Shown: positions 6,765 to 61,322 of the stretch, piece after piece | Layout: every line of letters starts with the position of its first letter | How positions within the stretch are numbered: the first letter of the stretch is position 1 | Source of the DNA: Botryllus schlosseri | Taxonomy: Eukaryota | DNA: 64,000 nt | Direction: 5' to 3' | Assembly (NCBI GenBank): GCA_051294905.1 | Contig: CM119381.1 | Location: 19,282,001 to 19,346,000, forward strand | Notes under the pieces: generated by a model | What the model was told of the DNA's origin: nothing | Seen by the model: the letters and a program-made list of their open reading frames with translations, nothing else | Database searches by the model: none | Translations under genes and position numbers: made by a program

Positions 6765-7112
6765 AAGTGTCACTGTGATTGTGGCTACGTGGGAAGAACA
6801 ACACATCGTTTGTAGGACCACGTAAAACAGTATGTCCCTTGATTTATTAGAACACGCACGTCACGCTCGGAGAAATGCTTACCCTTGACCTTGATCCTGA
6901 AGCTTGTTTGAGAACAGGCAATAAAGGTCATTCTGAATTCTGCCATTATTGGCAATCATTTGATGGATAATTCTGTTTGTGCGAAAAATTATTTTCGAGA
7001 TAGATTTCGCATGGTCGGGAGAGGCCGCGGCTCACACTTTCATTTGTGTATCTTGAAGTTGACTTTTATCAAAATACGCCAACAAAGTCTGTGCCAATAG
7101 AAGGAGTTCGTG
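6765..7112 (+). pseudogene. Penelope-like GIY-YIG endonuclease remnant
   Basis: KCHCDCGYVGRTTHRL*DHVKQYVP*...SAIIGNHLMDNSVCA...FHLCILKLTFIK...LCQ*KEFV: GIY-YIG and CCHH signature of PLEs, with stops. Same strand as the RT remnant. Confidence 0.8.
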
Positions 7113-38200: not shown

Positions 38201-38637
38201 GTTTTGACTTTTTCATCTTTTTCCAGCAATTCATACAGTAGAAATTGAACGAACTTATCCCATGTGACTTTCCCTTCCTTGGTAATATCGATACGGTCAA
38301 ACATTTCAGCGTATTCATCAATTGTGCCCTTGCTGACTAATTTTGAAAGCCTTTCAGCGAAATTGTCACGATCAAGATTCAATGATTTATCCAACACTAT
38401 TCCGGTCTGCATTTCAGAACCTTCTGGTTGAAATGCAGACATGAGAATCTTGAGATCATTTTCATTGAGGCGAACTTCCAGTTTTTCGCCGAGCATCGCC
38501 GGCATCTTACTGGTGTTCGAACTGCTGTTTATAGAGCCTGGAGATCGTTCGGCAACTGCAATCGCAGGACGATCCATATTTACGTTCATTGCCCCTCCTG
38601 CTATCTCAGATGATTGCACTGTCGCTGATGAAGACAT
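35290..38637 (-). CDS. WDR49: WD repeat-containing protein 49 / CFAP337-like (N-terminal EF-hand, many WD40 repeats), intronless, 1115 aa
   Basis: Uninterrupted ORF; EF-hand-like MFDRIDITKEGKVTWDKFVQFL; NKIAVAFTSKEIAFYDL..FSCQYKLKGL..TPLCLDF matches WDR49 as recalled; multiple GH...WD repeats. WDR64/WDR95/EFCAB8 relatives cannot be fully excluded. Confidence 0.85.
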   Translation of the reverse strand: MSSSATVQSSEIAGGAMNVNMDRPAIAVAERSPGSINSSSNTSKMPAMLGEKLEVRLNENDLKILMSAFQPEGSEMQTGIVLDKSLNLDRDNFAERLSKLVSKGTIDEYAEMFDRIDITKEGKVTWDKFVQFLLYELLEKDEKVKTTQVPQWKELKTIQTPHKDTIQKIQFLKSTNRYLSVSREGCISFWDTHMKLQRELKLTTESVKPRDIWVTDFVLLPHLNKIAVAFTSKEIAFYDLSAKVDFSCQYKLKGLHSTPLCLDFYGNPDDLNEAILVYGDVGGQVSALCFSSAQIALFDRPQRDASESKQQNNATVNVYLKELAKDTSKHKNCRFVHHVGHKGWVRQVKYAEHLECFISCSTGKEKTIILGFIEKASNVMRTTSFRFSHGVHCFDYHQQLNLIATGSVNNLVCLWNPYVISKPVGILTGHMASVIQVTLNLNRQQLMTFSVDKVLRIWDIQQQLCLQRIANIFPKGPEVQTILYFDDIKNRLFVTFNYQLTMLEMKIEIRDRVMSHERPVTNALYNSLYNQVVSASQDGTVTVWMIDSGQKVKQFAKCHGDFEINALVFDSTETRFFTGSSDGTIKVWDFNGHCHHQLMAGRGGAIDISQILVLRRSILAIGWDKYITVFRSGLTQYHIQPVDWKGGQQHQDDIQAAAYSSPTTLATGSYDGEIVIWNTQSENATRKLQARSRQKWSKRPNTGGEIDVVSRPTTTESQTSELEFSFVISSLTFLKTRMNGGNSSGDCADLVSSGGGGWVRFWNTNQTTLMSEFIAHPHAGNAINATDVDDQYLITGDSDGGVKVWYIKNYLSTGTDHVKSEPPPLHAAWHRHGDAINCIDTCVRNNRLLVITASSDCSVSMSDIDGNHIGEFGQDNHWRIDTAPEIKDIVEDVEETDEVKESHEEEEVIIFHEESAEDFVYDPSYRVSTWDSTVLGMAYKESRLEKRERKQPGTIPGYKNHIEESAVGPYGILDYNELGQMPSMKKPDFMLHPHKYFGEKPSDKSGKKKDVVDLPLVNESRAMLKAAFDEKTLFPKDLLDFEAQVRNDNTQRLKILEKKGRGVEFGHHPNNSIGGSKMGSRIGSSMQDRRTAKRIPSTTTLSTIVSAKASLHSKP

Positions 38638-39820: not shown

Positions 39821-42800
39821 ATGGGGTCTCTTTTCCGAAGTGAGGAGATGTGCCTGGCACAACTATACCTGCAAACTGAAGCAGCATATACATGTGTCAG
39901 TGAGCTAGGTGAACTGGGACTCGTGCAATTCCGAGATGTGAGTACGATTTTAATATTTCTGTACCTCATCTATAGTCTGATTTGATACGAGAATGCTTCT
40001 ATCCTTGCTTGTAAACTGTTGTATATGAAACTGAGCTGGTTAACGTAATTACGTAATGTAAGAAATTTTTGTTGATATCATGCGAGGATGATGCTAGTGT
40101 TGAATTTGAATTGATAATAAATCAGTGACCACAATGACAAACATTTGGCGCTTCTTCGTTTTACGATCATGACAAGCCAGTGTTCCCCCATGACACCAAC
40201 AAATGTTTCCCATGAACAGTTGAACACGAACAAAAATTTATAAACGTCAAAATAAATTGTTTGTTTTTTTGCCTTTGGATATATTGATATTAGGGTTGGG
40301 GTGGGAGGCTATCAGAGCTGGAGGTGGGTTAGGGTCAATGCTGTGGTTAGGGTATCCGAAGATTGGGGTTGGGGGATATTAGGGTTGGGGGAGGTGGGAT
40401 ATTAGGGTTAGGGGAGGTGGGATATTAGGGTTGAGGGTTAGGGGAGGCGGGATATAGGGTTGGAGAGAGGGGGATGTTTGGGTTGGGGAGAGGGGTAATA
40501 TTAGGGTTGGAGAAGAGGGTTAGGGACATGATATCCCCCTCTTCCCCAGACTGGAATCGGTGGTTATTTTCGACAACATGTTGTGCGTGACAGACGGATT
40601 TCTCGCGTGATTGGAAAATTTCATCCGTGTGACGGAAATATTTTTCGCTCTAATTCAATACTGAATTACTTATTAAACGACATAATGTGCTAAAATAGAC
40701 CTGGTATACGCCGGACTAGGGCTACGCCGTGTATCCGCTGTTACACAAATGCCACGCTTGCTTGAGTTCATTTCAAAGCGCAAGCGCCTTATTCTGGATC
40801 TGGACTCTGGTATCACTTTGTGACGTCAGCATAATTCATTATTCGGCGTGATCAGAAATAAATGCTCGCGTGACGTTGCGCGTGCCGTTGCCACCGATTC
40901 CACTCTGGCCTCTTCCCAACCCTAATATCCCGCCTCCCCTAACATCACCCTCTCCCTCAACATTAATATCCCACCTCCCCTAATCCTAACCTAACCCTAA
41001 TCATAACCCTAACCTAATACTAAGCTAACCCTAATATCCCACCTCCCCTAACCCTAATCCTAACCTAACCCTAATCATAACCCTAACCTAATCCTAAGCT
41101 AACCCTAACCCTAATATCCCACCTCCCCTAACCCTAATCCTAACCTAACCCTAATCATAACCCTAACCTAATCCTAAGCTAACCCTAACCCTAATATCCC
41201 ACCTCCCCTAACCCTAATATCCCACCTCCCCTAACCCTAATATTCCACCTCCCCTAACCCTAATATCCCACCTCCCCTAACCCTAATATCCCACCTCCCC
41301 TAACCCTAACATCCATCTCCCCCCAACCCTAATATACCCCCTCCGCCAACCCTAATCCGTCTCTCCCAAGGAAAAAACAATTTATTTTGACGTTTATAAA
41401 TTTTTGTTCGTGTTCATGGGAAATATTTGTTGGTGTCATGGGGGAACACTGGCTTGTTATGATCGTAAAACGAAGAAGCGCTAAACATTTGACTGATCTG
41501 TAATATCAAAATGAACGCAATAACATATTGTTAACTGTATTTACGACTTACAGCTTAATGCAGATGTGAATGCATTTCAACGTAAATTCGTCACCGAAGT
41601 TCGGAGATGTGACGAACTCGAGCGAAAACTGAGTAAGTCATCGAAAATTTTATTATCTGTTATATGCATCGACCTAATTGATCAATATCAGAGATAGATA
41701 CGTGTAATGGAATGTAGTCCCTTTCTTATGTGCTTCTTGTTAATTTGCCCTATCGTCGAAGTTAATACCGGTCTGTGCCAAACAAATTCAACTATTACAA
41801 GTTATACCTGTTGTTGTTTCCTCTACTAATTTATTTTACAAGTTTGTTGATCTTGCGTGTGAATCATTTCCTTGATACTTGGCATCCTGGTTTATGGCGC
41901 TGTTATTGAAGCACTAGTAGCTGAATTTCACCTAATGAAGGTGGCATTCTGTTCTTATTGCCTCTTATGTAGGGTGAATAAACACTTTCTCTGCCTTCCA
42001 TCTAAAGCAGTGGTTCCCAACCTTTTTCGGTGGCAGGGCCAAATTTAGAATTTCAGAGTACGACCGGGGCCGCACAAATACCAAGGCAATGAAAGGAACC
42101 GAAAATAGTCACCGAAATATGAAAATTGGCATTGTTCCGATCATTCGCTTGACGCCATTGGCCATTGTGTTGCCGCGCTACCGTTGTTCAGAACAATCAA
42201 CCTTTGCTGGCTATTTCAGAGTAGTTTTATTGCCCTGGCGAGATTTCAATTCGTATTTTTGGAATCAGTGCGGCACTCGCTTTCGATAAACACCGACATA
42301 TCAAATTATTCGGACGCTTGGGTCGCGAGCTATAGGGCTACCAATTATGCTGTTTTTTGCCGGCTAAGCAGTACGCATCTCGATTGGGTTCGATCTTACG
42401 TCTGGGGGCCGTAACAGCACTTCGTCAGCCCCCCCCCAAAAAAAACGTTTCTCTTGGGCCCCCATAGGGTGATAAACAGAACTTCGAAGCCCCCAGACCC
42501 CCTCAGGCTAGATGACCGTTTACCACTATTTATCATCTAAATCGGGTGTCCGTTTTAGGCAGCTTCACTCGACTAATCGCGTCAAGCGCGAAAAATTTCT
42601 ATAATTCATGATTGAATCGGTCAATATAATCGGGAATTGCATATATATTGGTATCAATTTTTATCCTCTCTCTGCTCACGTAATCAGATTGACCGGTTGA
42701 GCCGAGTGAGTTGTGTTTGAAAAGGTAGGACCACTCAATAATAATTAAACATCTTCGGGCGTATGCCCGCTGACAGGAATGAAACAGCACTTCGTCAGGC

Positions 42801-45800
42801 CCCCAAACACTTAGGTCTTGAGCTCCCATAGGGTGATAAACCGACCCCCCGTGCCGTTGTTCGCTTCTGCCACGAAATCAGGATCCCCGTTTAGTGAGCC
42901 AGCGTGGAGCGCGAAAATTTTCGATAATTCAATATAAAATAGGTCAATAAGATCGGGAATTGCGTATATATTGCTATCAATTACTCGTCCTCTCTGCTCA
43001 CTTAATCAGATTTACCGGTAGAGCTGAGTGAGGTGTCTTGGAAACTGTAGGGCCCGTAAATAATAATTAAACATATTCGGACGTGCGAACCCGTTGGTAC
43101 GACTTCGTTACATGATGTTATTTGTTATTTCGTGACCTTCAGTCTGCTATATCAAGAAATATAGAATCGCCCAAACATACTAAACTAAAACATGCACACG
43201 ATTTCAAATTGGTAGTTCTTCACTGGCATATAATTCATCCCTGCGGGATGGTAGCCTATTTGTCTCGTGACGTTCAGATTGCCAAGACAGTAGCATTCGG
43301 CGCCAGTCACTTAGGCGCCTATGGTCAATTATGTGTATTTTTATATAGGCTACAACGAATTGGTCAGCGTAAGGGCACTGGGCAGTCCTTTTCGGCCAAA
43401 GTTTTCTCGCTGCCGATCGTTCTGGCACACTACTTGGAGTAATATGTTACATGGCCTAAAACGTTATGTGTCTTCGTGCGTCGTGGCGCGGTAATGGCCA
43501 ACGCCGATATGCCCACTTCTATAAATCTTGCGTATTTTATCTTGGTCGAAGAGTACCCAATAATTAAGGTACTTGGAAACTTGAAATCGCGTGCAGCGCC
43601 AAAAATATTTGAAAAAGTTGCGTAACATTTCATAAAATACTCTATAATTTATGCTAATTCACTAAATAATTTTGGGCCCCCTTCGAGCTCGCTCCCCCCA
43701 ATCGGGGGCTTGGGGTGCGGCAGTTACGGTCCTGTCAATACCTATATTTATAGGTACTGCCCGTTCAACTGGAAAGTTAGGGCACATACCATTGAAACAG
43801 CAGTGACGTAATCTTAGCAGTCTATTCACAACTTTCCTGCAATCCTAATCGAAAACTCCAGACTCTAAGCCAAGCATGAGTATTTTATAAATATAATTTT
43901 TTTTTCATAAATCGATTTCTCAATATTTTTGTGGGGGCCGCAAGAAGGCTAGCTGCGGGCCGCATGCGGCCCTCAGGGCCGCGGTTGGGAATCACTGATC
44001 TAAAGCTACTTTGAATCAATATATTGTATCAAGTGCTTCATTGTTAAAATTTCTAAATTGAATTTTTTTGTGGAATGAGCTTCATTGACGAATATCTCGT
44101 GGTCGATATAGTCATATGGTATCAAATATGTTTCGATTCCTCTCATATATAAATGTGCATTTGTATTCACGATCAATGTCTTTTAAGTAGCTGATGATGT
44201 TGTAATTAGTGTGTATGTTTTATTTCTAAGGATTTTTTGAAAGAGAACTGACCAAAGACGATATTGAAATTGTTGATACTGGTGAAAATCCAGATGCTCC
44301 GTTACCGAGTCAAATGATTGAACTGGAGGCAAGTGACTTTGCTATATATATCTAGTTCTTGGGATTTGTTTTAAAAAATATATCAGATCAAAATTACTAT
44401 GACCATCAATCATTAATGCAAACTGAATCTACAGACCACATTTGAAAAGCTTGAAGGCGACATGAAAGAGGTAAACACAAATCAAGAAGCGTTAAAAAGA
44501 AATTTTCTGGAGTTGACGGAATTGAAACACATCTTACGTAAAACACAAAATTTTTTCGAAGAGGTAAGGGCCGTGATCTAGGTCACTATTTTTCTGTTAT
44601 AGGCAACTGGGCAACTCCTTTTTTCATGATAGACTCGTTGCTATTATATGGTTGCATGTAGACGGTGTTAACTGTCATGCTATCTACGACGAGCATCCGC
44701 AATCTGAGCTTAGCCAGCATTCTTCAAATGTAGCAAATAATCCAGTTGACCATATTGCTTGTCATAGAACAATTTTTCGAAATTCAATCTCCACTTTGTA
44801 TTAATGATGCTGCATTGCTGCAACTTCTATGTATATTTTGCATTAGCTGATTTCTAGGATCTTAGACAGCTAGCTATCTAGCCTAATAACCATATTTTCA
44901 TTATTCACTGTGCTAGTATTTAGCTCAATTGGGATGCATGGCTGTTGATTTTTCACATTATGTATACTCATGGGAATGCCTTTGATGCATGGTTTGGATA
45001 TTGTGACATTTCTTGCATGCATTAACGGGAAGTGAATATTGATCAGTCTTCAATCTTTGATTAGAGGCAGTGCGCTTTTGCAAAGATTCTGAAAAATTTA
45101 CGCTATCACAGTGGTCGGCTCCTCGGTGGTCATCTTCATTATGTTATCTGTAGTATATATTACCGAGGCTCATTACGAATCATTCAATGCCAAGCTGCTA
45201 CCCATGATTTCATACTAACTAACTAGCATGGGTGGGTGGGTACCCATTCCTTTCCTTGATATGCTCAGACTTCTTGTCTATGGACTCAGCATATCGTCAT
45301 CGTTGGTGATGAGTCTGTATCAAAAATCTGGTTATGTGTTTAATGGCACCTTAGGGCATGATGCGGACCGATTCTCTTCCACGTTACATGTGTTTGTTGT
45401 GTCATAACATTTGATCAAATGTGTTCGGTTTCAGCTGCTTACTTGTCGTGTCACGGTATAATCCAGTATGTTTGTATCACCATCTCACATTTAGGCGGCA
45501 TTGTACCAGCATCAGCAGCAAGGAGCAGATTCAGATGACGAATCGTCACATGCCCTTCTCGGTAGCGAGTTTACGAGTAGGGGGGAATTTATGAAACTGG
45601 GGTGAGTTAACAAGTTTCGAGGGGGGCTGTGCAGCGTCGACTTACCCCAGTTTACAGATTTTTGTCTCGTTACAAAATGCCATCGTCGTTCTGTCTGTTT
45701 CCTGTATTTCCTCCTCAGTGTTGTCCGTATGCAGCACGCCTTCGTAGTCGCATGTCGCAGTTAAAATCTTACCGGATCTTGCAGAGTTTGCTGCTACTGG

Positions 45801-48800
45801 TCTTGAAATACATTCGCGGTGTTGTTATTTGAAGACACGGATTTTAGTTATCTGCATTATATCATCTTACGTTAACATCGGACCCATTATTTGACACATC
45901 CTCCACTCATTGTATCGGTAAAACTTATGGAAGATAGTGTGGAATATTGTGTGCTCAATTGCTCAACAATGATTTAATTAAGAACATCATTCGCAATCAG
46001 GTGAAGCAATTATTATGCCATCGTAGTGGGGCTGAGTGCTAGATTTTTTAATTTAAATTTTTTAATTGTCCCATTGCTGGACCAGATCAGATACTAAAAG
46101 CTCTTGTTTCTCCTAATATCGAACTATTGAGATAATGATATTGGGAAACTGTGGGAATACAGAATGTAATCGATGGATGGTATTATTAAATCAAATATGA
46201 CGAAGGATTTGAATCTATTCTAACAGTTGAATTGTGCGTCGTTTCTCATGGATAGTTGGATTACAATTGTATTTTCACGCACAAGTTTAGACCGCCAATA
46301 CCGGCCAACGTTTTGGCATTACTTTTCGATCTGCAGTCTATTAAAACGCAAGTCTCCGCCGCCGATCTTGCGACTGTGAACAATAATGCGGTCTTATCCT
46401 GCCCTTGTTCCCGATATCCGTGTGACAATCGGTATGCAAGTTGCTTAATTGACATGTAGCGCTGTTAATGTGGAATGGATGCACGGCTTGCTAGACTAAT
46501 CGGTTTCGGCGATGTTCATCCTAATCTTAGCCTTGCTAACTATCTAGAGCTGCCGGGGTGGTAGTGGAGTTCTTTGCATCTTTCATTCACTTACCGCACC
46601 TTTGAAATCATGCTTTTATTGCTCGCACCATCGTCCCTCGTCACTACACCCGCGACTGTGCCTTTTCACGTGGCTGCTACGTGTGCTTATCAATTGCCAT
46701 TCTCTTTTTTTCTTTTGCTGGACACGGCAGATGGATAACTATTCCAACTATGAGGAGGAAATATTAAATGATATAGAACGGCAGCAACGCTTAGCTCTTA
46801 AACTGGGGTAAGATCGGTTGATTGGAAAATTGTGCGAAAATTGTGCATGCTCGCATTTTCGACCGTGTCGCCATGTATTTTCGGTGTGTTATCAGGTTTG
46901 TGGCGGGAGTAGTTGCCCGCGAAAAAGTACCGGCATTCGAGCGTATTCTGTGGCGCGCTTGCCGGGGCAACGTGTTTCTCCGATATACCGAGATCGAGAC
47001 TCCGCTTGAAGACCCACACACAGTGAGAAGTGATTGTTAATTGTGCTTTTAATTGACGCGAATCACGTTTTTCTTTCTGCGCAGGGCGACCGTCTGTACA
47101 AGTGCGTTTTCATAATCTTTTTTCAAGGCGACCAGCTGAAAAATAGAGTGAAAAAAATCTGTGAGGGGTCAGTGAACTGTAGCAATTTCTATGAGTTTGC
47201 ATATTTTGTAAGATGTTTTTTCTACGTAGATTTCGCGCTACTCTTTATCCTTGTCCCGAAACGCCGCAAGAAAGAAGAGAAATAGCTATTGGAGTTATGA
47301 CGCGCATCGACGACCTTCAACACGTAATTCGGTCGTAATTTGCGTTTTTTCCGGCTCTTTCCAATCCCTCTTTCAGGTCCTGAGTCAAACGGACTCCCAC
47401 CGTCGCAGAGTGCTTTCCGAGGTGGCGACAAACTTACGCGTGTGGTTCATCAAGGTACGGCAATCTGGTACTTTCAATTCTTCCTGTTTTGCCCCTGCTT
47501 AATGTTGAATTGTAGACATGTGGCGTATGGAGACATATTTGGTCCTAGAAGTTTTGAAAACTTGACTTGTGACGTATTCAGGTTCGAAAGATCAAAGCCA
47601 TCTACCACACTCTCAACATGTTCAATGTGAACATTGCACAAAAATGCTTGATCGCCGAATGCTGGTGTCCCGTTGATGACCTTGACAAAATTCATCTAGC
47701 ACTACGCAGAGGCACCGTAAGTCTCCACCTTTCCTGTCCGCAAATATGAGAGATGTGACAGATTCAATTTTTCATGTAGGAAGCCAGTGGCTCTTCCGTT
47801 CCTTCGATCTTGCACAGAATGTCTACCAAGCGCGAACCCCCTACGTTCAATCGCGTCACTCCTATGTCGTCTGCGTTTCAAGGCATGGTCGACGCTTACG
47901 GCGTGTCGAATTATCGGGAAGTCAACCCAGGTTTGTTGAATCGTGATGGGACTTTTCGTCAAGCTCGCCTTGTAAATTGTGAATACTATGCGTTTTTCAG
48001 CGCCGTTTACGATAATTACGTTCCCTTTTCTGTTTGCGGTCATGTTTGGTGACTTTGGACACGGTATCATCCTATTCCTGTTTGGGATTTGGATGGTGAT
48101 GTTTGAGCGACGACTTGAGAAGTTTAGCGACAGTGAGGTACCTACCGGCATCTACGTTTAAGACTCGCTTATTTCAAAACGTGCTCAATTCTCTTTCAGT
48201 TTTGGGTGATGATTTTCGGGGGAAGATACATCGTGCTGCTGATGGGATTGTTTTCTATTTACACGGGATTCCTGTACAACGAGTGCTTTTCAAGATCGTT
48301 GAACGTGTTCGGCAGTGCTTGGAACACAAGCGCTATGCCGGAATACTGGTACATCATCTTGTAAATGAATATGGCTGGATGGGAATTACTCTTTATGTTG
48401 TACCGTTAGGCAAGACGAACTTACCAATCAGAATATCAAAGTTCTCGGTTTGGATCCGAATGTGTCTGGCGTTATGAGAGGATCTGGCGGCGAATATCCT
48501 TATGTGATAGGAGATCCATACCCATACGGAATGGACCCGGTATGATATTTGCTGATTATTAGAACTGTGAATCATGTTACTGGTAATGTCATCACAGTGA
48601 CTTCTCTTAAAAGGTGTTTTCTTTTGTCACATTTCGGTTTCCATCGCTAATGTTGAAGTTGGCTTGTGTATTCTGTTAGGTACAGTAATAGCAGTATATT
48701 AGCGTTCAAATTTGTGTGGGCACAGTTGGTAGTCTGTCTTGGTCTTTAATAGGGAGGAAATTGTGTCATTAGCATTCATCATCATTACCATCTCGTGGGG

Positions 48801-51800
48801 TGCTTTCCTGTTGCTTTTTGGTGTGATGTATATTGTAGGGATGGTGTGAACCTCTGAAAGGTTCCAGTTTGTGTGAACGCGAACCTTTTTGAAAGGTTCT
48901 GTGTGAACGCGAACATGAACCTCATGACGTCATATTGCTAATTCCAACCCTACATTTCAGTTAAGTGATAGCCTATATTAATGTACACTTACAGTTGTAC
49001 ACGATACCTAGCAACGACTCGGGCCACATAATGCCATAATGCTTAAGTAGGCTACATCCTGACATTTTAAACGTCGCCAAATGTATTAACTATTGGGCAA
49101 TCAAATATAATATAATATAATAATCATTGTCTTCAGTCGCTTTGCCAACAATTTCGACGAGGACTTGGAAGGGAATATAAGCTTACGCGTTAACGGTGTA
49201 GGCCAGACCGGACTATGTATTCGGCGTCTGAGTATTGCTACGTTGATATTGAGCAGAGTGTAATACGAGTTTCTACACTTGCTATCGATATTACCACATT
49301 AGCAAGTTATACAGCATTAGCCAACACCCCAATCGCACGGATTTGATTGAAGTGATACAATTAAACATATGATGAAATCAAGATTGACCCGTACGCATGC
49401 TAGATTTTTCTACATCAGACTACGATATCAATTTCATTGATTGGTTGAATAAGCAATTAAGCATTATTCGCAGACTACCTAGGTAGCGTATTTCGCTTTT
49501 GATGTTGTGTGATTGCCCGTCAAGCTCACAGCAGAGAAACACTAAATATTCACAAAACGGAAAGCTGGATACTTCGAGCAAACTTCAAACAAATTGGTGC
49601 ATGCTTGTTTAGTGTTGATTCTTCTATGCTGCCAGCGCCATTCATAGAGTTGTCCGCAGTTGAAATGCTATAAATTGTAACCAAAAATGTTGGAATGACG
49701 TCAAAATTGTGATATATGAAAAAGGTTCACAGTGCAGAACCTACCAAGGTTCGTTTGGGGCAATTCCCTGCACAGACAACCGATGTTCCCACCACTACCT
49801 CTCCAAATCTCCTGAAATTTGGCACACGCACAGATGAGCTAATTCCAAACAGGATGAACTTTATTTTATGAAAATTGGACTTGGGGGTCAAAAGTTACGT
49901 CACTTTGAAAATTGACAATTTTCTGCTCATTTCGGGTCGGCACTTTCGGGTTTTATCAATGCAATATTCAAGAAGGTGTAGCTAGATGTTAGACGACAGT
50001 TGAGATACGGTACTTGGATTTATCTGAAGCTTGTCTGATCGTCTATATTTCCAAGTAAAATTTAATGCCCTGTAGGTTAGGGTCAAAGGTTAAATTGAGG
50101 GGGAATTTGGTCAATGGTCTAAAATCAGTCAGGCGTTACACGATTTAGACTGCGGATTGCTCAAAAACATATTAAAATATTTTGGAAGTTAGGATCTTAA
50201 ATGAAAGTTTGCGTCAAGGAGACTTCGTTCATAGCTGTTTGATTTTGGCTATTAGACTGTAAAGTGATGAAATTGCAGTTTCAAGAGCACACTTCATTTG
50301 CACATGGAAATGCAGTAGTAGTAGGGTGCGTTCGGACATCGAGTCTGGGGTGTGTGTGGACATCATGTCTGGGATGTGTTCCGACATCATGTCTTGGGTG
50401 TGTTCGGACTGTGCTGCCATTGAAACGTAGTGTCTGGGGTGAGTTCGGACTGTTTTGCCCCTCGGACATCGTGTCTGGGGCGGGTTCAGACAGTTTTGCA
50501 ACTCGGACATAGGGCCGAGGGTGTGTTCGGAATGTGTTGCCATTCGGACATCGTGTCTAGGGCGTGTTCGGACATCATGTCAGGGGTGTGTTGCTACTCG
50601 GGCATCGTGTCTGGGGGGGGGGCTCGGACATCATGCCTGGAGTGTGTTAAGATTGTGTTGTCAATTGGACATCGTGTCTGGATATTTTTCTGCTGCGCCA
50701 GATATGCCTCAGACCTGATAACTGCGCACAATTCTTATCCAGACATGCTCCGGAGTTGATGCCTGCGTACTAAATACCTTCAGGCATTGTCCGAAACGGA
50801 TATCTGCTCACTTAGTGGACACAGACATACGTCAGACGTGATACCCGCATACTAAACGACGCGTGACCTATATATGACCTCTTTATTTGCGGTTTTTGCT
50901 TATATCTGCGAGAGCTGGGTATATGCACAGTAGTGATAGCTGAGTATATCCACATCCACAGTAGTGATAGCTGAGTATATCCACAGCTATCACTACTCTG
51001 GATATACTCACCTCAACTATCACAGATATCACTACTGCGGATGTGGAAATACTCAGCTATCGCTACAGTGGATATACTCAGCTATCGCTGATATCAACCA
51101 AAACCGCAAATATAGAGGTCATAGGTCAAACGTCGTTTAGGACACGGGCATCACGTCCGACGCATGTCTATGTCTATCAAGTGCGCAGATATCCGGTTCG
51201 GACCATGCCTGTGGGTATTTAGCACACAGGTATCAGCTCCGGAGCATGTCCGGATAAAAATAGTGCGCAGATATCAGGTCTGAGGTGTTCGGATTGTTTT
51301 GCAACTCGGACATCGTGTCTTGGGGTGTTCAGATATTATGTCTTGGGTGTGTTCGGACTGTTTCGCAACGCGGACATCGTATCTGGGGGGAATTCGAATT
51401 GTGCTGTCACTCGGACATCGTGTCTGGAAGGTGATCGGACATCATGCCTGTGGTGTGTCCGGACTGTGTTGTTACTCAGACATCGTGTCTGGGATATGTT
51501 TGTGATGCGCCAAACATGCCTCAGACCTGATATCTGCCACTATTTTAATCTGGACAGTGGACATGCGTCGTAGCTCTTACCTGCGCACCAAATACCCCCA
51601 GGCATATTCCGAATCTGATATCTGCGGGCTTAAGGGACACATACAATATACATGCGTCAGACGTGATACCCGCGTCCTAAACGACATTTGACCAATATAT
51701 GACCTCTATATTTGCGGTTTTTGCTGATATCTGCGATTGCAGGGTATATCTACAGCAGTGATAGCTGAGTATATCCACATCCACAGTAGTGATATCAGTG

Positions 51801-54800
51801 ATAGCTGAATATATCCACAGTAGTGATAGCTGTGGATGTACTCAGGTATCACTACTGTAAATTTGGATATACTCAGCTACCACTACTGTGGATATACCTA
51901 GCTATCGCAGATATCAGCAAAAACGCGTCGTTTAGGACGCGGGCATCACGTCTGACGCATGTCTGTGTCCAGATATCCGTTTCGGACAATGCCTGAAGGT
52001 ATTTAGTGCGCAGGCATCAGCTCCGGAGCACGTCTGGATAAAAATAGTGCGCAGATATCAGGTCTGAGGCATGTCCGGCGCAGCACAAACATATCCCAGA
52101 CACCATGTCCGATTGACAACACAATCCTAACACACTCCAGGCATGATGTCCGAACCCCCCCCCCCCACCCAGACACGATGCCCGAGTGGCAACACAGTCC
52201 TAACACACCCCTGACATGATGTCCGAACATGCCCTAGACACGATGTCCGAATGGCAACACATTCCGAACACACCCTCGGCCCGATGTCCGAGTTGCAAAA
52301 CTGTCCGAACCCACCCCAGACACGATGTCCGAGGGGCAAAACAGTCCGAACTCACCCCATACACTACGTTTCAATGGCAACACAGTCCGAACACACCCAA
52401 GACATGATGTCGGAACACATCCCAGACATGATGTCCACACACACCCAAGACTCGATGTCCGAACGCACCCTACTACTACTGCATTTCCATGTGCAAATGA
52501 AGTGTGCTCTTGAAACTGCAATTTCATCACTTTACAGTGTAATAGCCAAAATCAAACAGCTATGAACGAAGTCTCCTTGAAGCAAACTTTAATTTAAGAT
52601 CCTCTTTTCCAAAATATTTTAATATGTTTTTGAGTAATCCGCAGTCTAAATCGTGTAACGCCTGACTGATGTTAGACCATTGACCAAATTCCCCCTCAAT
52701 TTAACCTTTGACCCTAACCTACAGAGCATTAAATTTTACTTGGAAATATAGACGATCAGACAAGCTTCAGATAAATCCAAGTGCCGTATCTCAACTGTCG
52801 TCTAACATCTAGCTACACCTTCTTGAATATTGCATTGATAAAACCTGAAAGTGCAGACCTGAAATGAGCAGAAAATTGTCAATTTTCAAAGTGACGTAAC
52901 TTTTGACCCCCAAGTCCAATTTTCATAAAATAAAGTTCATCCTGTTTGGAATTAGCTCATCTGTGCGTGTACCAAATTTCAGGAGATTTGGAGAGGTAGT
53001 GGTGGGAACATCGGTTGTCTGTGCAGGGAATTGCCCTTTGTGAACGTGAACCTCTAAATTTCCGAGGTTCACACACAGAACGCGAACGTGAACCTCACGT
53101 TCACACCATCCCTAGTATATTGTCTTGTGCTTAGCACTTGACATGGACCAGAAACTAAACAAAATTGACTTTAATGATAAATCTTGGATGCGCATAGCAG
53201 ACGTAGACAATTTATGTGGTAAGTTCTCCGTTCATGAACCAGACTGGCCAATTTGGTGCATGAAACATGAAACCGCTACTCGTTTTCTCGTTGATAAATT
53301 TCAAATACTAAAAGATGACATATGGCAAAAAGTAATCTACCATATCAAATCTGAGTGAGATAAATTTGAATAGTTATCATCTTTAACATCGGCTCGCTGT
53401 CTTGTTCCACAGACGAAATTGACTGCACGTTGTTTTATTACTGTTTCGTTCGATTTCAGATTTGGCAAATGGCCGAAAACAAGATCACCTTTCTGAACAG
53501 TTACAAGATGAAAGGATCCGTTATTATCGGGGTCACGCATATGATGTTCGGTCTCGTTCTTAGCTTGATGAATTACTTGTGGGTTTTTGTGCGACGGTAA
53601 AATCTGTGCTCAAAGTCGGCTTGACGAAACTTTTTATTTCGGTAGATATTTCAAGAAGACGCTGAACATTTACACGGTCTTTGTCCCTCAACTGCTCTTC
53701 ATCAACGCGATATTCGGATACCTGGTGCTGGTCATTTTGTACAAATGGATCGCTTGGGGCGCTTATGACTCGCAGGTGTGTTAGCCGGCCAACAGTTGCT
53801 TTCTAGTATCGTGTCTTGAATTTCTTGTAAGAAATTGAAAGGTGGGCCGATCGAAGCACTTCTACGAAAATTGGATGCCCGAGTAGATAACCTGTATGAG
53901 CGATGTTTTCATTTTTGCTACCTGATGAACAATGCTGATGTTTACTGTGCATGTTGCAGTCAATTTTGGGAGTCGTGTTTTAATCGAGTATGGATTTCCT
54001 CTACAGACCGCTCCTAGCTTGCTCATCGGTCTTATCAACATGTTCATGTTCAAAGCGCCGGAAGTGGAACTGTATCCTGGGCAGCATGGTTTTGAGATAT
54101 TTCTTGTACTAGTCGCCGGGCTTTGCGTACCTTGGTTGCTACTCGTAAAGCCGTATATCTTGTACAAGAGACACAAGCTTGAAACGAATCGGGTAAAACG
54201 TTCATCCTTGTTTGTCGTGCCAATGCTGTTGATAGCTTTGTGATGTTGTTGCTAGTTTCGGTGTAGTCTGCCGTGTTTGTTAAAGGTACAAGTGCGATGT
54301 ACCATATTTCCTATGTAGATGACTGGTGGTATTGATTCATTGATTTTCTCTGAAACAGTATTCATTGAACGCCATATGGTAGATGTGTGTGCACAGCATG
54401 TCCGGGGAATATTCGGCATCCGATCGAACGCCTAATTCATGTCTTGCGTGACATTGACTTTATCAATTATTCATTGTTTCAAATCTTCAATTTCTCGATA
54501 GATAATAATTCAACTGCAATAATTGTGCTGAATGACAGATCTTCCTTGTATTGACCGGCCATGATATCAGCGCCACTTAATTCCACACGATTCTAGCTTA
54601 GTAGTTTTCGGATTCGACATTCAGCTCGAAGCAAGTTTTCTTTTGTAATCCTCAATTTCATTTCGAGGACAAATACTCCACACTGAGCAAATATTTTACC
54701 CTTGTTGAGTGAATTATTCACGATAGCCTTGACGCTATGTTCTGATCCATGCCAATTCTGTATCACTCTTCTAAAGTGCCCTACTTGGGTCCATATTTGA

Positions 54801-57800
54801 GATCAATTGCTCTAGAAGCAGTTTGATTTTGACCTTTAGTCAAGGTTTTCATTCGTTAATTAGTTTGTAGTGATTTTTCTTAGCCTAGCAATTTGTCACT
54901 GCATGCTATACTACTTTCACTACTAAACTTTGTGTTGCACAGTAGTAATTCTTGTCACTTTGTTTTGTCCTTTCCAACTCTAGCACGTGTTGCACGTTGA
55001 TCCTGTCATCAACCCTGGTTCATCTATGTCAAGTCGGTCTATGGTATGTTATGCTCTGTTCATGATCACTTTTATATCCACCTATTTCTTGTTTCTTATG
55101 CATTGAATATATGGAGTGGACTTACCTGTCGTCATGTTGTATTTGATGGACATAAGTAATCAATGATATATCAAAAACATACCTACTATAAGTCAAAAGT
55201 TATTTTTCTGCACTTCTACGCCAAATTTATTCTTTCTCGTCTTGCTTGGATAGCATCTATTTCGATTGTTTGCTGGCTGTATGCCTATTTTTATAGAGTT
55301 GCTTGCAAACTGCATTAGGCCATGATGCATTACAGCATTCCGTGAGGGAATTTTATTTTAGTCTTGAGACCCCAATTTTTTTCTGCATAGCTATCCTTTT
55401 GCAATTTGACTAAGTAATTATGTATGCGCCATTTGATCTATTCTGATGGGCAGGCGGATTTGATGGTCATGTTATTTTCAACTTGACATTGCCCACAGAG
55501 AATAATTCACAATGCTCGCTAATCACACTGCATATAGCAATCAATTTGTGATTCGAGGTAGTAATTGATCGAGAGATCACTCTAAATAACGCATCCAATC
55601 CAAGGTAGATGTTTCGCAATCCAATTCGGTTGATTGTGGATCAACTATCCCGATGTTAGACATTCTGTGGAGTGCTAGTTTATGGAATTGATTTAATTTC
55701 CGGTTTGTTGCAATGCCATAACAATATGTGCTAGCTTGCATTGTAGTTTTAGTAATGGTGAATTGGTGCTATCAAATTGATACATGTAGTATCATTGCTA
55801 GTATAAGCGTATTGCAGTTTGGTAGTGTTTGATCATAGCACGTTCATGATACATTTTGGAAGGCCTAAGAATTCGCTTGACTATTGTTTTGTTTACCATA
55901 AAGACCATTAGGTTATTGGCATCCGACAATCCATTGTTTCGTTAGTTCTAACAACATCAGAGCGCTAACAAGGTGCAGCATGTCATCAATTCGTCACCGG
56001 GATAGTTTATGTAGCACTTTACATATTCAGAATGCATGGAAGGCAATACTTCATAATATGACATCTAGATGTAGGGTAGTCAGTGATGTATATAATAAAG
56101 TATTATATGCATTGCGAAGACTGCTGCATTATCGACAAGATATGTATGCTGCCTTCAATTATAATGAAATATGAAGTAACAGTTCTAACCCATTCCATTT
56201 TACCTTATACCAGCCATTTTACAATGACTCCTCAATATTAACTTGACCCTAGCCCCAGTTTGATAAATGGCATCTCTGGTCAACATATGTCATGCTTTTA
56301 ATAATCGAGACCTGGTTCAACTAGCCACAACCCTTTCTTCACCTGATCATAGGCGATTTATTGTGGGGACTAATGTTATGTATATGTAATTATGATTTAG
56401 TAAAGCCGGGACCGGGACATGTTGAAGTTATCCAAACATCACATTTGTCAATAGGTGACGGTAAAATAGACGATCGACACACGGTAGTAAATATTTGGAT
56501 ACTGAACAGGCGATTAGCAGTATATCGGCATGAAGTACTACCAAGATTTACCCCATGAATTTACTGCAAACTGTGAATTATAACATTCATCTTATCGTTG
56601 GATAGGGCGCAGCGACTTACGGTGATATCAGCGTCACCGTAGACGTCGACAGCGACGATGCGCCCATCATTCAGCATGACGCTTTGGACTTTGGTGAAAG
56701 CAGTACAGATGATGACGAAAATGAGCGCGAGGAGGTATTGTGATGCTGGTCTTCCGTACCAAGTCATTTGCTGTAAGCGTGACCTTGTTTTCAGTTCGAT
56801 ATGACGGAAATCATGATTCATCAGATGATCGAAACGATTGAGTATTGTCTGAGTTGCATCTCTCACACTGCGTCGTACTTGAGATTGTGGGCACTCAGTC
56901 TCGCTCATGCAGGTATTTTGTTTACTCATAGTACAATGAAGCCCACTATGTCGAGCACCATGCTGCAAGTCATAATGCGAAAAATGCATTGCCTATGATA
57001 CTCTCACTCATGTATCAAAATACTCTGATTGTGTTATTTTGATTTATGCTCATGCAAAAGTAACATTGGTATTTGCGCTGTCACATAGAAAATTATACGA
57101 TAGTGTCAAATGGGAATTAGAATAGATTGAATCATTCTTTGAATTTTATAAACGTAGCTTGAACTTGTGTAGTTCAAGGTTCCTCTAGGCAAAATCTGTT
57201 TCAAAAAGAAACCTTATTGAAATATTAATCAGACTCTTACATAGGAATCTGGTCAATAGGGGTCGAAAGTTAGTAAATTAATTTTTAATGCTTCCAAGTT
57301 TGAATAATTTGCAGTTTTCAGCTTCCTATTGGTGCTTTTGTTGGATAGGCCCTATAACATTTAAGTTGCTGTTCCGCAGTTTCAAGTGGAATCAATGATC
57401 AATCCGTCAATGATTTTTAATTATTATGCATCACTACCAACACAAAAAGCTATTGTGATGGCAGTTCTGTCAGGTTTGAAGTGCTAAAATGAAGTTGGCC
57501 ATATACCACCTGCAGCCTGTAGCACGAAATTACTAGCTCCTCTAATCCTAGATTTTGCTAATCTGACAAATCTCAACTTCAATTTGAACCATGTCGATTC
57601 CATTCTCACTCATTCCATTTCAGAACTGTCAGAAGTGTTGTGGACGATGGTAATGCATATTGGCCTGTCGATTTCAGGACCGTTGGGCGTTATTCTGAAT
57701 TTTCTGATATTTTGGTAAGTAAAAAGAAATCTTTTCGGATCATTGATTTGTGTGCTAAATATATCTTGTGATAAATGTGGGTTGTTCTAAATTCGTTATG

Positions 57801-60800
57801 CCGAAACCCGATTCATACAGTATCACTCAAAAGTTGTTGTCTTTGTAATATTCCACGTAAATGCATGCGGAGAGCTTCTTGGAAGTACAGAACTTCAATA
57901 TACAATTGAGTAGTATATTCATATTGACATGAACCCGAATATTTTCTACTGACACTCGTCAGGGGAAATCGTCAGCAACTAGTAGAGAATTGGAGAGAAC
58001 ATTGTATATCAACAATCATATCACATTGTAAATGCAATGATGACCGATTTGATGTACGGAACTCGAATACTGCCTTCTTATTTGGGAACATCTTGATGGC
58101 TTCATTATAAACCAAATCTTGCTGCAGTTGTTGAATTTGCAAATAAAAATGTGACGTGGGAAACGAATCCAAAGCCGATAATACGCGACGCACTGATACA
58201 GACAACTTGGGTTTGATGTATGTGAGATTTCAGATAACACGCAGTAGTGTGCAGTGTAAAATAGGACAAATTCTTAAGGGAGGAACGTCTTTGCCAACTT
58301 ACCAATGTGAAATACAAAAGCTACTTTGAAGCATGTATACTGGTAGTAGGTGGCGAAGTTCTACTTTTTTGACTCGAGTAGATTTTGCCTACTATTTGCA
58401 CTACTTACTCAAGTGGTTATGATTTTAGACTACTACTTGAACAGTTTTTAGGCAAAAGTAGTTACTTTTAACAATTCGGATTTTGAAAAGTAGAAATCAG
58501 TTTTAGGATAAGTTTGCATCACTTAAATGAGAGACATTGTGAGAAGAACCTCGTAGAATAGCTCCTGTATCACAGTAACAATCTCAGGAAATATTTGTTG
58601 TCAATATTCTTTTTCCATCATCGCTGTGATACATCTTGCAATTTCTATAGTATCCACCAGACATGGGGTAATCGCGATTAGTAATCGTAATCGATTACGA
58701 CGATTACAGCATTTTCGAGTAATCGTAATCGCAATCGATTACATTCGAAAAAATCCCGAAGTAATCGTAATCGTAATCGACTACTTCCCATATTTAATCG
58801 ATTTCTTTGTGAAAGAACGATTACTTTTTATTTGTACAAGGACTGTGACATAAACTGAACACTCGTGAACAAGGAAGAGATATTATACCAGTTATTGAGA
58901 GAACAAACGTCTGATTTTCAAATGCCACTGCTCATTATTACGTCAGAGGTAGCCTATTAGCTTTGCTCGTCTTTGCGTAGGAATTGTCCACATATAGTAA
59001 ATAGATATTCGATGTACATTAGTGTGATTGTAAGAAACCCACCGTGCTGTATATCGGGTTGTCAATACATTTCAGACGCCACTACCTCGCATCAGGATAA
59101 TTAATCATAATCACCTCTCTGCCTAAGGTAAAATAGCAACTTTTATATTGATGTTTGGTTATGCTTAGTTAAACTATAGAATGTAATAGTTCTAATTCTA
59201 GAGTTAAATGCAGTTTCACCGTTGCTGCTTGGCGAGCAGTAGACCTATATGGTACGAACGTACAGCAGACAAAGGTTTAAAATTTTGTACTCGTCAAATA
59301 AAACATTACGGTTTCCACAACGAAGCATTATAATCAACAGCTGCTGATATATATCATAACTGGGCCGTTGTTTTGCCGTTTCTCGTAATGGCAGCTTGCA
59401 TTACATTATCTGCATTAAGTTGAAGGCAGAATTTTATGTTCACTTATGTTCTCATATTATTCTATACTCAAAACGGGCGCCAATCGCTATTTCACAATTC
59501 TTTACCGAACATTTGGACTTGCCGCCATAGCCATCGGCTTTTATACCATGTTAGCGTGGGTTGTAGCTAGAATCAGGATCAAAACAGCAAAAGCGTCCCC
59601 CAACCAAACTTTGGTCTTGGGCCCCCATAGGGTAGTCAATTTTGAAGTTGAAGATTTAATTTCATCAATAATATTGGTAATTGCATTATCTTGCATTATT
59701 AATCCTTTCTCAGCGCCCGAAGGTCAGCTTTACCTGAAGAGCGTGGGGCGTAATTCATAATTATAACATCTGGTATCTTGCAATAATTACTTTATTGTAT
59801 GTTGTTAATTCGTGACCTCCGGTCTGTTATATAGCCAAAAGATATTGATTGTAGTGGCCCAAACAGCAGACTAAAAGAAAAATTTGCGTGAGACGCACAC
59901 ACAAATTGTCATGTCTAATGCTCTGTGGGTGCCCGGGTGGCATTTGCATCGTGGGCTCAGATTGGAAGGAATGGACTGTTAGTCACGCCCACCCAGCGCG
60001 GCTATTAACAATGGACACATACCCTACGTTTTGGCCAATGTCTTTCTTTAATAACACACTTCGTGAAGTCTCATGTTGGCCGAAACTGCATATGACTTTT
60101 GATGTGTCGAGAAGCGGTATTGACTGGCACCTAAATGCCTATATTACTATGAATTATACATGCTTTATTTCTTGGGGGGGGGGAGACGTATATGCATTTC
60201 GAAATCAATCAATCTAGAGACATTTAAATCGCAAAGCTCAAATAGAAATTCCAAGTTATGAAATCACTCGAAAATACTCTATAATTAATGTTGGTTTACA
60301 AAATACTTTTGAGTCCCCTCCAACCACGCTCCCCACCCTATTGGGGAATTGGGGGTGCGGCAGTTATGGACATGGCAAGAATGCAATTCATTGGGTGCGA
60401 TAAACCGTCCTCTATAAAATGGGCAATGGGTTCATTATGACGTAACAAGGAAATGGCCCATCTTTTTTAAAGACAGTTGTTATATCATTGGGCCTTTCCA
60501 GCGCAATTCATGTATTGTCTTCTATAATATAACTACTACGATGCAAAATAAATGTAATCGTGAGTAATCGTGATTACTTTTCCAATGTAATCGTAATCGT
60601 AATCGACTACTTCCCGATTTTGCTGTAATCGTAATCGTAATCGTAATCGCGTGATTCAGAAGTAATCGTAATCGCAATCGATTACATTCATGAAGTAATC
60701 ACCCCATGTCTGGTATCCACCTTCAATTAATTTCTAAAAATATGCTCTCCCAGGCCAAATCTACTCTTTGTAACTGCTAGTGCTTACCCGAGTACTTCGC

Positions 60801-61322
60801 GTATCTTTGATTGTCTGCTTCAACTTGAACTAGTTTTGACATGCCTTGGTAGCTTCCACACCCTATTTAACTACCATTTGTAGATGAATATAAATTTATT
60901 TGTCGCCCAAGCTTTCAGAGCGCCGCTCCTTCATCAGGTGTTCAAGCGAAAGTAATGCAAAAAGAGCAATGCAAAGAGATTTTGAATTTAAACAGATGCA
61001 TATTATGTAGAGATTTATGCTGTTACTCCTACTTTAGTAACAGCACCGACTACTTTGACAACTTCTGCATTTAAAATTTCTTTTGGCGAGAGACGTGACG
61101 TTGATTTCTTTCTATTTCAATGAAAAGGTTCTTTTTCATTTCAGGGCGTTTTCAACTCTGACCGTCGGAATCCTACTCGGCATGGAAGGGCTGTCGGCGT
61201 TTCTACACGCGTTGCGTCTACACTGGGTCGAGTTCCAAGACAAGTTTTACAGCGGCGAGGGATACCCGTTTACGCCGTTCTCTTTTTCCGCGATTGTCGA
61301 AGGAAGAACGGAAGAAAACTGA
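39821..61322 (+). CDS. ATP6V0A1: V-type H+-ATPase V0 subunit a (a1-like), complete, 21 coding exons, ~854 aa
   Basis: Exons 39821-39937, 41554-41632, 44231-44328, 44435-44563, 45495-45601, 46896-47022, 47085-47167, 47230-47323, 47377-47454, 47582-47716, 47780-47930, 48001-48137, 48200-48348, 48410-48539, 53460-53578, 53646-53775, 54007-54192, 56606-56734, 56795-56912, 57624-57714, 61145-61322 sum to 2565 nt in frame. Motifs [26 protein letters not shown] (essential Arg) and [18 protein letters not shown] are intact. Confidence 0.97.
40148..41481. mobile_element. Foldback/MULE-like element with telomere-like (TTAGGG/CCCTAA) arrays, in ATP6V0A1 intron 1
   Basis: ~110-bp TIRs (GCGCTTCTTCGTTTTACGATCAT...); 9-bp flanking repeat AAACATTTG; G-rich array ~40290-40530 and C-rich array ~40905-41365 in inverted orientation. 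Confidence 0.85.
42008..43997. mobile_element. Buster-type hAT non-autonomous element (1990 bp) carrying nested repeats, in intron 2
   Basis: TIRs CAGTGGTTCCCAACC / GGTTGGGAATCACTG; exact TSD ATCTAAAG; GCGGGCCGCATGCGGCCC subterminal motif. Confidence 0.92.
46731..46807 (+). CDS. ATP6V0A1: Candidate mutually exclusive alternative exon 5 of ATP6V0A1 ([26 protein letters not shown])
   Basis: Polypyrimidine tract then CAG; 77 nt, phase 0 to 2; ends AAACTGGG|GTAAGA, like exon 45495-45601 which ends AAACTGGG|GTGAGT. Confidence 0.8.
48836..53114. mobile_element. hAT MITE family A, copy 3 (reverse orientation, ~1 kb), interrupted by a foldback, in intron 14
   Basis: TIR TAGGGATGGTGTGAAC at both ends; exact TSD GTATATTG (48828-48835, 53115-53122). 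Confidence 0.95.
49758..53036. mobile_element. Foldback-type DNA element, 3279 bp, ~1-kb TIRs, 4-bp TSD
   Basis: GGGCAATTCCCTGCACAGAC... / ...GTCTGTGCAGGGAATTGCCC; TSD TTTG; arms contain 24/40-nt subrepeats; no transposase ORF. Confidence 0.92.
54984..55043 (+). CDS. ATP6V0A1: Candidate 60-nt in-frame cassette exon of ATP6V0A1 ([20 protein letters not shown])
   Basis: TTTTGTCCTTTCCAACTCTAG acceptor and GTATGT donor; phase 0-0 matches the flanking exons; no stop codon. Confidence 0.5.
58658..60712. mobile_element. hAT non-autonomous element (2055 bp) with (GTAATC)n subterminal arrays, in intron 20
   Basis: TIRs CAGACATGGGGT / ACCCCATGTCTG; exact TSD GTATCCAC; arrays at ~58670-58800 and ~60550-60700. 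Confidence 0.92.

What the first reader, a model, noticed from the sequence alone, without database searches (positions are those of the whole stretch)
45495..46807. Frame-enforced mutually exclusive exons in the V-ATPase a cytosolic N-terminal domain
Seen: exon 45495-45601 ([36 protein letters not shown]) and exon 46731-46807 ([26 protein letters not shown]) are both phase 0 to 2 and both end in AAACTGGG|GT. Including both, or neither, shifts the frame. Known: the subunit a N-terminal domain governs targeting and V1-V0 regulation, and vertebrate a1 is alternatively spliced near this loop (AELHHQQ-type insert, from memory). Inference: a single gene produces two pump isoforms through an exon-duplication switch. 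The second exon begins with ATG, so an internal start is an alternative explanation.
Basis: partly seen in the sequence, partly recalled or inferred. Interest (0 to 1): 0.72.

Follow-up and report, generated by a model that had tools for sequence, protein, structure and literature searches.

The report
Either-or exons in proton-pump subunit a
A sea-squirt gene for the 'a' subunit of the vacuolar proton pump carries two alternative exons of which an mRNA can use only one. The switch is real but old and already annotated in related sea squirts, and it sits where the worm gene unc-32 has its well-studied either-or exons. The one new detail is a conserved stretch of intron that can base-pair with one of the two exons.

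Summary
Exons 45495-45601 (107 nt) and 46731-46807 (77 nt) both have AG/GT splice sites and both run from phase 0 to phase 2. Using both, or neither, shifts the frame into early stops.

The window is from a tunicate, not an insect. The gene model is 84% identical to Styela clava V-ATPase a1-like. RefSeq isoforms of S. clava and Ciona intestinalis each carry exactly one of the two orthologous segments. Their genes have the same exon order, 4-A-B-6. Synonymous changes far outnumber amino-acid changes in both exons.

C. elegans UNC-32 isoforms differ at the same position (between ...FFEE and FVAGV...). This places the experimentally studied exon 4a/4b/4c cluster there. Amphioxus, ant, moth and tick isoforms also differ there. 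So this is an orthologue of a known, ancient splice switch.

An internal start at exon B is very unlikely. A and B share only their final K-L-G, so duplication is not shown.

New here: just downstream of exon A lies a degenerate inverted copy of exon B. Of about 530 windows across the gene, it is the best pairing partner of exon B in both this genome and S. clava, but not in Ciona. It may mask exon B. This is inferred, not shown.

The parts
39821..61316 (+). V-ATPase subunit a (a1-like) gene, at least 21 coding exons; start codon at 39821
   Evidence: tblastn and manual splice model. Single exons hit Pfam PF01496 at E 1e-13 to 1e-18. The model is 84% identical to S. clava XP_077967599.1.
44435..44563 (+). 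Constitutive exon 4, ends ...[14 protein letters not shown] in phase 0
   Evidence: 79% nucleotide identity to the S. clava exon.
44653..45019 (+). Four TGCATG (Rbfox-type) hexamers in the intron upstream of exon A
   Evidence: 4 observed against 0.34 expected (P=4e-4). Ciona has 7 against 2.3 (P=0.009). S. clava is not enriched. This is a weak lead only.
45495..45601 (+). Alternative exon 5A (36 aa, AALYQHQQQ...LLGSEF...KLG); corresponds to the AELHHQQ-type insert plus the canonical ...LLGEE...KLG segment of other animals
   Evidence: Against S. clava there are 16 silent and 7 amino-acid-changing codon differences.
45591..45657 (+). Local hairpin that encloses the 5' splice site of exon A (17-bp stem, 32-nt loop)
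   Evidence: I3; -35.5 kcal/mol, z -3.3; z -3.3. Not found in S. clava.
45631..45761 (+). 'Anti-B' element: a degenerate inverted copy of exon B with its splice-site flanks; 45641-45654 is a perfect 14-nt complement of the exon B donor
   Evidence: It is the best pairing partner of exon B among 544 windows of the gene. S. clava has the same at the same place (L001 6669-6790, best of 527). There is no Rfam match and no other copy in the window.
46731..46807 (+). Alternative exon 5B (26 aa, [26 protein letters not shown])
   Evidence: It is 86% identical in nucleotides to S. clava, with 9 silent and 1 amino-acid-changing codon differences.
46896..47022 (+). Constitutive exon 6 (G)[19 protein letters not shown]..., first strand of the distal lobe
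   Evidence: AlphaFold models.

Best explanation
This is a tunicate orthologue of the a1-type subunit a of the vacuolar H+-ATPase. Exons 5A and 5B are a conserved pair of mutually exclusive exons. Each mRNA joins exon 4 to A or to B and then to exon 6. This gives two pumps that differ only in a 36- or 26-residue surface linker. The linker lies between the long coiled-coil helix and the first strand of the distal lobe of the cytosolic N-terminal domain. Shown: the anatomy, the frame logic, conservation of both exons under coding constraint in three ascidians, one-or-the-other usage in annotated isoforms of two relatives, and positional identity with C. elegans unc-32 exons 4a-c. Inferred: mRNAs with both or neither exon carry early stops and are removed by nonsense-mediated decay, so frame acts as a fail-safe. 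Inferred: the primary choice is made at the RNA level. In this lineage the intron just after exon A holds an inverted copy of exon B. It can pair with exon B and its splice sites, hiding B and bringing the donor of A close to exon 6. In this genome the same element can instead pair with the donor of A, so only one of the two donors can be masked at a time. Inferred: the linker tunes partner binding, targeting or V1-V0 coupling in a tissue-specific way, as a1 splice variants do in vertebrates and worms.
For: Exon anatomy and frame. Gene identity. Orthologous exons in the same order 4-A-B-6, all 2 mod 3, with AG/GT sites in S. clava (L001) and C. intestinalis (L002). RefSeq isoforms carry exactly one segment each. 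Coding constraint (A: 16 silent against 7 replacement; B: 9 against 1). UNC-32 isoforms b and c/e, and the C. briggsae/remanei forms, differ exactly between KTQTFFEE and FVAGV. These are experimentally validated, tissue-specific mutually exclusive exons (PMC3585155). Amphioxus, ant, moth and tick isoforms also differ here. The linker is a low-confidence loop (pLDDT under 50) after the helix in both isoform models. Anti-B pairing: z -6.2 and -5.4 against shuffles. It ranks first of 544 and of 527 windows, at the same place in both species. It masks the B donor here (z -4.1) and the B acceptor in S. clava (z -4.3).
Against: No transcript or junction data for this species were available, so usage rests on predicted RefSeq isoforms of relatives. 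Nonsense-mediated decay of the double and skipped forms is assumed, not tested. The anti-B element is absent from Ciona, which keeps the same exon pair, so it cannot be required for exclusivity in general. Which splice site it covers differs between the two species that have it. The hairpin over the donor of A is not conserved. With two species, my count of compensatory changes is circular, because pairs were predicted separately in each. The functional difference between the two linkers is unknown.
Confidence: 0.88

Rival explanations
1. Exon B is an alternative first coding exon. Transcription starts inside the gene and translation starts at the ATG of exon B, giving a pump subunit without its first 141 residues.
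For: Exon B begins with ATG.
Against: Exon B has a pyrimidine tract and AG directly upstream. In S. clava and Ciona it is spliced to exon 4 in full-length isoforms. A Met at this internal position is usual across animals (MADPS.., MEDPS.., MHDPS..). The frame upstream of exon B stays open for 43 codons, so nothing marks a start. A protein starting here would lose half of the proximal lobe and the coiled coil.
Confidence: 0.02
2. Only one of the two exons is used. The other is a decaying or never-spliced pseudo-exon that gene predictors pick up.
For: No RNA data for this species. The RefSeq isoforms of the relatives are computed models.
Against: Both exons keep intact splice sites, phase and open frame in three ascidians that are too diverged for their introns to align. 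Both show an excess of silent over replacement changes. The Phallusia mRNA-derived protein carries the A type.
Confidence: 0.05
3. The anti-B element is not a splicing device. It is an editing-site complementary sequence, and the exon B-intron duplex is a substrate for ADAR, which recodes adenosines in exon B.
For: An imperfect duplex of about 100 bp between an exon and an inverted copy in a nearby intron is the classical layout of ADAR recoding sites (established knowledge, for example GluA2 Q/R). The duplex is conserved in two species.
Against: No RNA data were available to look for A-to-G mismatches. The duplex covers splice sites, so it should affect splicing whatever else it does. The two functions do not exclude each other.
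Confidence: 0.2
4. The anti-B element is a neutral relic of an inverted duplication of exon B and has no function.
For: It is absent in Ciona. It is only about 60% complementary. Different parts of exon B are best covered in the two species.
Against: The surrounding introns of this genome and S. clava no longer align at all. Yet in both species this spot is the best partner of exon B among about 530 windows. Where the exon differs at silent sites (GGAAATA against GGAAATTC), each species' element matches its own exon.
Confidence: 0.3

Closest known systems
C. elegans unc-32 exons 4a/4b/4c (V-ATPase a subunit; Pujol et al. 2001, Kuroyanagi et al. 2013, PMC3585155)
   Same: Same gene family and same position. 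UNC-32 isoforms differ exactly between ...KTQTFFEE and FVAGV.... One exon is used per mRNA, and choice is tissue-specific in the worm.
   Different: There are three exons in the worm and two here. No sequence similarity links individual worm and ascidian alternatives. The worm's regulators (UNC-75/CELF, ASD-1/FOX-1) are untested here. No exon-masking intronic copy is described in the parts of that paper I read.
RefSeq isoforms of the orthologous genes in Styela clava (XP_077967598-600) and Ciona intestinalis (XP_078484059-066)
   Same: Orthologous A and B exons with the same order, phase and splice sites. Each isoform carries exactly one.
   Different: These are computed annotations in other species. 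I found no paper describing them. Ciona lacks the anti-B element.
Vertebrate ATP6V0A1 splice variants a1-I to a1-IV (Poea-Guyon et al. 2006, as cited in PMC3812966)
   Same: Same junction. A fish isoform inserts AELHHHQQ directly after FFDE, and ascidian exon A opens with the related AALYQHQQ. The a1-I variant is sent to nerve terminals, a precedent for splice-dependent targeting.
   Different: Vertebrates add or skip a small cassette in front of one canonical exon. They do not swap the whole segment.
Arthropod Vha100-1-type isoforms (ants, moths, ticks) and amphioxus a1-like isoforms
   Same: Annotated isoforms of one gene replace MADPSREEEQVTLLGEEG...KLG with QEHAGLNPTESMTRAL...QLG. In amphioxus MQDPALAEESHALL... 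is replaced with ESARVEDTQILIHAEH... Both replacements are at this junction.
   Different: I did not check the genomic exon arrangement in those species. Homology of the second-type exons to ascidian exon B is not established.
RNA-structure control of mutually exclusive exons: docking/selector systems (Dscam, srp; PMC6071210), human ATE1 (PMC7797038), chicken beta-tropomyosin exon 6B (from memory)
   Same: A conserved intronic element pairs at long range (about 1.1 kb) with one alternative exon. In this genome one element can pair with either of two competing sites.
   Different: Here the partner is the exon itself with its splice sites, so pairing should mask rather than activate. The element is an inverted copy of the exon. 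Competition between two sites is seen in only one of the two species.

Membership tests
V-ATPase subunit a (Pfam PF01496, V_ATPase_I) | Sequence match to the family profile above the curated cut-off | tested here: met
   Four single exons each score 47-67 bits against a 30.7-bit cut-off. The spliced model is 84% identical to S. clava a1-like.
Mutually exclusive exon pair | Adjacent exons with the same entry and exit phase, each alone keeping the reading frame | tested here: met
   A alone and B alone both read through. Lengths are 107 and 77 nt, both 2 mod 3.
Mutually exclusive exon pair | Mature mRNAs contain one and only one of the exons | not testable with these tools
   No RNA data for this species. 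In S. clava and Ciona all 11 current RefSeq isoforms, plus three older Ciona records checked, carry exactly one.
Mutually exclusive exon pair | Joint inclusion or joint skipping is prevented or destroyed | tested here: met
   Both cases shift the frame and give early stops. Removal by nonsense-mediated decay is inferred.
Mutually exclusive exons made by tandem exon duplication | Recognisable sequence similarity between the alternative exons | tested here: not met
   The global alignment of A and B scores 8 and only K-L-G is shared. An ancient duplication is neither shown nor excluded.
unc-32 exon 4-type cluster (a-subunit N-terminal linker switch) | Alternative segment lies between the ...FF(D/E)E end of the coiled-coil helix and (G)FVAGV | tested here: met
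unc-32 exon 4-type cluster (a-subunit N-terminal linker switch) | Tissue-specific choice driven by CELF and RBFOX proteins | not tested
   The only hint is TGCATG enrichment upstream of exon A in two of three species.
Competing-RNA-structure (docking/selector) control | One element complementary to two or more competing sites, conserved between species | tested here: inconclusive
   In the window, 45635-45659 pairs with the donor of A (z -3.3) or the donor of B (z -4.1). In S. clava the element pairs with the body and acceptor of exon B (z -4.3) but not with either donor.

The most novel reading that the evidence does not exclude
In stolidobranch sea squirts the choice between the two pump isoforms is set by an inverted copy of exon B placed right after exon A. 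By pairing with exon B it hides B and loops it out, so that A is joined to exon 6. In this genome it can flip to hide the donor of A instead. That would be a one-element, two-target masking toggle, a form of RNA-structure control of mutually exclusive exons that differs from the docking/selector type. The same duplex could also serve as an RNA-editing substrate.
Probability: 0.35. Interest if true: 0.55.

Novelty: new member of a known kind. Interest (0 to 1): 0.36.

Why it matters
The switch itself adds little: it is annotated in related sea squirts and is the counterpart of a textbook case in worms. This analysis adds two things.

First, the alternative segment lies at one fixed junction of subunit a in nematodes, arthropods, amphioxus, tunicates and (as a small cassette) vertebrates. 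That marks this linker at the distal tip of the N-terminal domain as a long-standing site for tuning the pump, so it would repay functional study.

Second, a conserved exon-masking element gives a simple, testable handle on how one of these switches is thrown. The system has only two exons and short distances, which suits minigene work.

Tried and rejected
- The representative search with one exon returned only distant or fragmentary hits.
- An alignment of exon translations on a distant backbone was badly scattered by MAFFT. The search with it still succeeded by luck, because the Styela and Ciona proteins were among the hits.
- My first guess of an insect (mosquito) origin was wrong.
- Look-ups of non-longest isoforms found nothing; the longest isoforms worked.
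- Pujol et al. 2001 is not held in the library.
- A TGCATG 37 nt downstream of exon B is not conserved.
- No comparable complement to exon A exists in any of the three species.
- No third alternative exon lies between exons 4 and 6.
- There is no Rfam family in 44400-47100.
- There is no other copy of the anti-B element in the window, so it is not a repeat family.
- A back-translated exon B pattern found nothing in metagenome contigs, so no further species could be added.
Full report
**Observation.**
- Exon A (45495-45601, 107 nt) translates to [36 protein letters not shown].
- Exon B (46731-46807, 77 nt) translates to [26 protein letters not shown].
- Both have an AG acceptor behind a pyrimidine-rich stretch and a GT donor. 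Both end AAACTGGG|GT.

I assembled 17 coding exons from the start codon at 39821 to 54192. Four further coding segments were located by tblastn, reaching about 61316, but I did not set their splice sites. Exon 4 ends in phase 0 and exon 6 begins with the third base of a Gly codon.
- With A alone or B alone the frame stays open.
- With both there is a stop 13 codons into exon B.
- With neither there is a stop in exon 6.
- A scan of the whole interval for other compatible segments found only these two.

**Organism and gene.** I first took the window for an insect, which was wrong. Single exons match Pfam V_ATPase_I. The spliced model is 84% identical to Styela clava 'V-type proton ATPase 116 kDa subunit a 1-like' and 64-70% identical to the Ciona and Phallusia proteins. 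So the window comes from a stolidobranch ascidian related to Styela. The species' own protein was not found in the protein collection, so I cannot name it.

**Relatives.** Cluster look-up gave all RefSeq isoforms of the orthologous genes. At the junction after ...LKHILRKTQ(N/S)FFEE and before GFVAGV:
- S. clava X1 and X3 carry AAMYQHQQRQQNADFSDDESAHALLGNEFNRGPFTKL, the A type.
- S. clava X2 carries [23 protein letters not shown], the B type.
- C. intestinalis X1, X2, X5 and X6 carry an A type. X3, X4, X7 and X8 carry a B type (MENYDSYEED...GLKL).
- The Phallusia protein carries an A type.
- No isoform has both or neither.

I fetched both genomic loci and mapped the exons. The order is 4-A-B-6 in all three species. 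Every A and B exon has a length of 2 mod 3 and AG/GT sites. Introns do not align between the window and S. clava, but the exons do.

Between the window and S. clava, exon A has 16 silent and 7 replacement codon differences. Exon B has 9 silent and 1 replacement. Both are therefore coding sequence under constraint.

**Deep conservation.** C. elegans UNC-32 isoform b and isoforms c/e, with the C. briggsae and C. remanei forms, differ exactly between KTQTFFEE and FVAGV. That variable block corresponds to the exon 4a/4b/4c cluster. Its mutual exclusivity and tissue-specific control by UNC-75 and RBFOX proteins are experimentally established (PMC3585155). Annotated isoforms of single genes also swap the segment at this junction in other animals:
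- Amphioxus: MQDPALAEESHALL... against ESARVEDTQILIHAEH...
- Ants and moths: MADPSREEEQVTLLGEEG... against QEHAGLNPTESMTRAL...
- A tick.

Molluscs, ants and a fish add a short AE(L/I)HH.Q-type cassette at the same place. Ascidian exon A looks like that cassette fused to the canonical ...ES.ALLG.E...KLG segment. Exon B is a second type.

A and B have no similarity to each other beyond K-L-G. The shared AAACTGGG|GT is therefore K-L-G codons plus donor consensus. In Styela and Ciona the two exon ends differ at silent positions.

**Protein meaning.** I ran AlphaFold models of the N-terminal domain of the S. clava B-type and A-type isoforms (mean pLDDT 84.7 and 83.4). In both, the variable segment starts as the last turns of the long helix (residues 91-149 or 91-153). 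It then becomes a low-confidence loop (pLDDT under 50) until the first strand, GFVAGV. The two isoforms thus differ in an exposed, probably flexible linker at the distal end of the cytosolic arm.

What the difference does is not known. By analogy with vertebrate a1 variants, of which a1-I goes to nerve terminals (PMC3812966), I infer an effect on targeting or partner binding.

**How exclusivity is achieved.** The A-B intron is 1129 nt, so the two exons are not too close to be spliced together. All sites are GT-AG. The frame rule makes double and skipped products nonsense mRNAs, and their decay is inferred.

Looking for RNA pairing, I found that the intron just after exon A contains a degenerate inverted copy of exon B with its flanks.
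- In the window, 45631-45761 pairs with 46716-46821. This includes a perfect 14-nt complement of the exon B donor (45641-45654 with 46799-46812). The duplex energy lies 6.2 sd below shuffles.
- S. clava has the same feature at the same place (6669-6790 with 7799-7897, 5.4 sd). Ciona has none.
- Among all 160-nt windows of each gene, this spot is the best partner of exon B in the window (first of 544) and in S. clava (first of 527).
- No comparable partner exists for exon A.
- The element covers the exon B donor in the window (z -4.1) and the exon B acceptor in S. clava (z -4.3).
- In the window the same 20 nt can also close a 17-bp hairpin over the donor of exon A (-35.5 kcal/mol, z -3.3). That hairpin is not found in S. 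clava.

The conserved core is the complement of TGAGGAGGAAAT. Where the exon differs at silent sites, each species' element matches its own exon. My count of compensatory changes is biased, because pairs were predicted separately in each species, so I do not lean on it.

My reading is that the element masks exon B and brings the donor of A near exon 6, favouring A. Something must open the duplex for B to be used. This is inference. It cannot be the general basis of the switch, because Ciona manages without it. The duplex could equally be an ADAR substrate, or a relic.

TGCATG motifs are enriched upstream of exon A in the window and in Ciona but not in Styela. That is a weak hint of RBFOX control.

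**Rivals.** An internal start at the ATG of exon B is very unlikely. The exon has a good acceptor and is spliced to exon 4 in relatives. A Met at this internal position is common across animals. A pseudo-exon reading is contradicted by conservation and by the silent-change excess.

**Novelty.** The splice switch is an orthologue of one already annotated in two ascidians, and it is positionally the same as the studied unc-32 cluster. It is ordinary in kind. The exon-masking inverted copy is, as far as my limited literature searches show, not described for this gene. It is a modest variant of known RNA-structure control.

Noticed in passing
window 2587-2390 (minus strand); paralog spans 3268 down to 1: A second subunit-a gene lies head-to-head upstream. 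In it the exon-4 equivalent runs straight on, without an intron, into a single short linker (...[24 protein letters not shown]) followed by a GT donor. So this paralog has no alternative exons at the junction. The S. clava paralog has a similar short form (VENPLREEDIQPDSEHPTLKLG). The linker resembles neither A nor B clearly.
   Followed up: partly
window about 54984-55040 (+): A second alternative region of the same gene: a 20-codon cassette ([19 protein letters not shown]) after the ...[10 protein letters not shown] exon. It is present in S. clava isoform X1 and absent from X3. It is matched by a 17-residue cassette in Ciona (LVLHVDPIYNHDSTANM).
   Followed up: partly
window 44328/44329 (+): Intron 3 of the gene appears to use a GC donor (CTGGAG|GCAAGT). 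No GT donor nearby keeps the frame.
   Followed up: no
L002 20140-20788 (Ciona intestinalis): In Ciona another V_ATPase_I gene starts about 1.3 kb downstream of the orthologue. So having a neighbouring subunit-a paralog is shared among ascidians, though the orientation differs from the window.
   Followed up: no
window 35290-38637 (minus strand): A 1115-codon uninterrupted open reading frame lies just upstream of the pump gene's start, unusually long for a single exon in this intron-rich genome. I did not search it against any family library.
   Followed up: no
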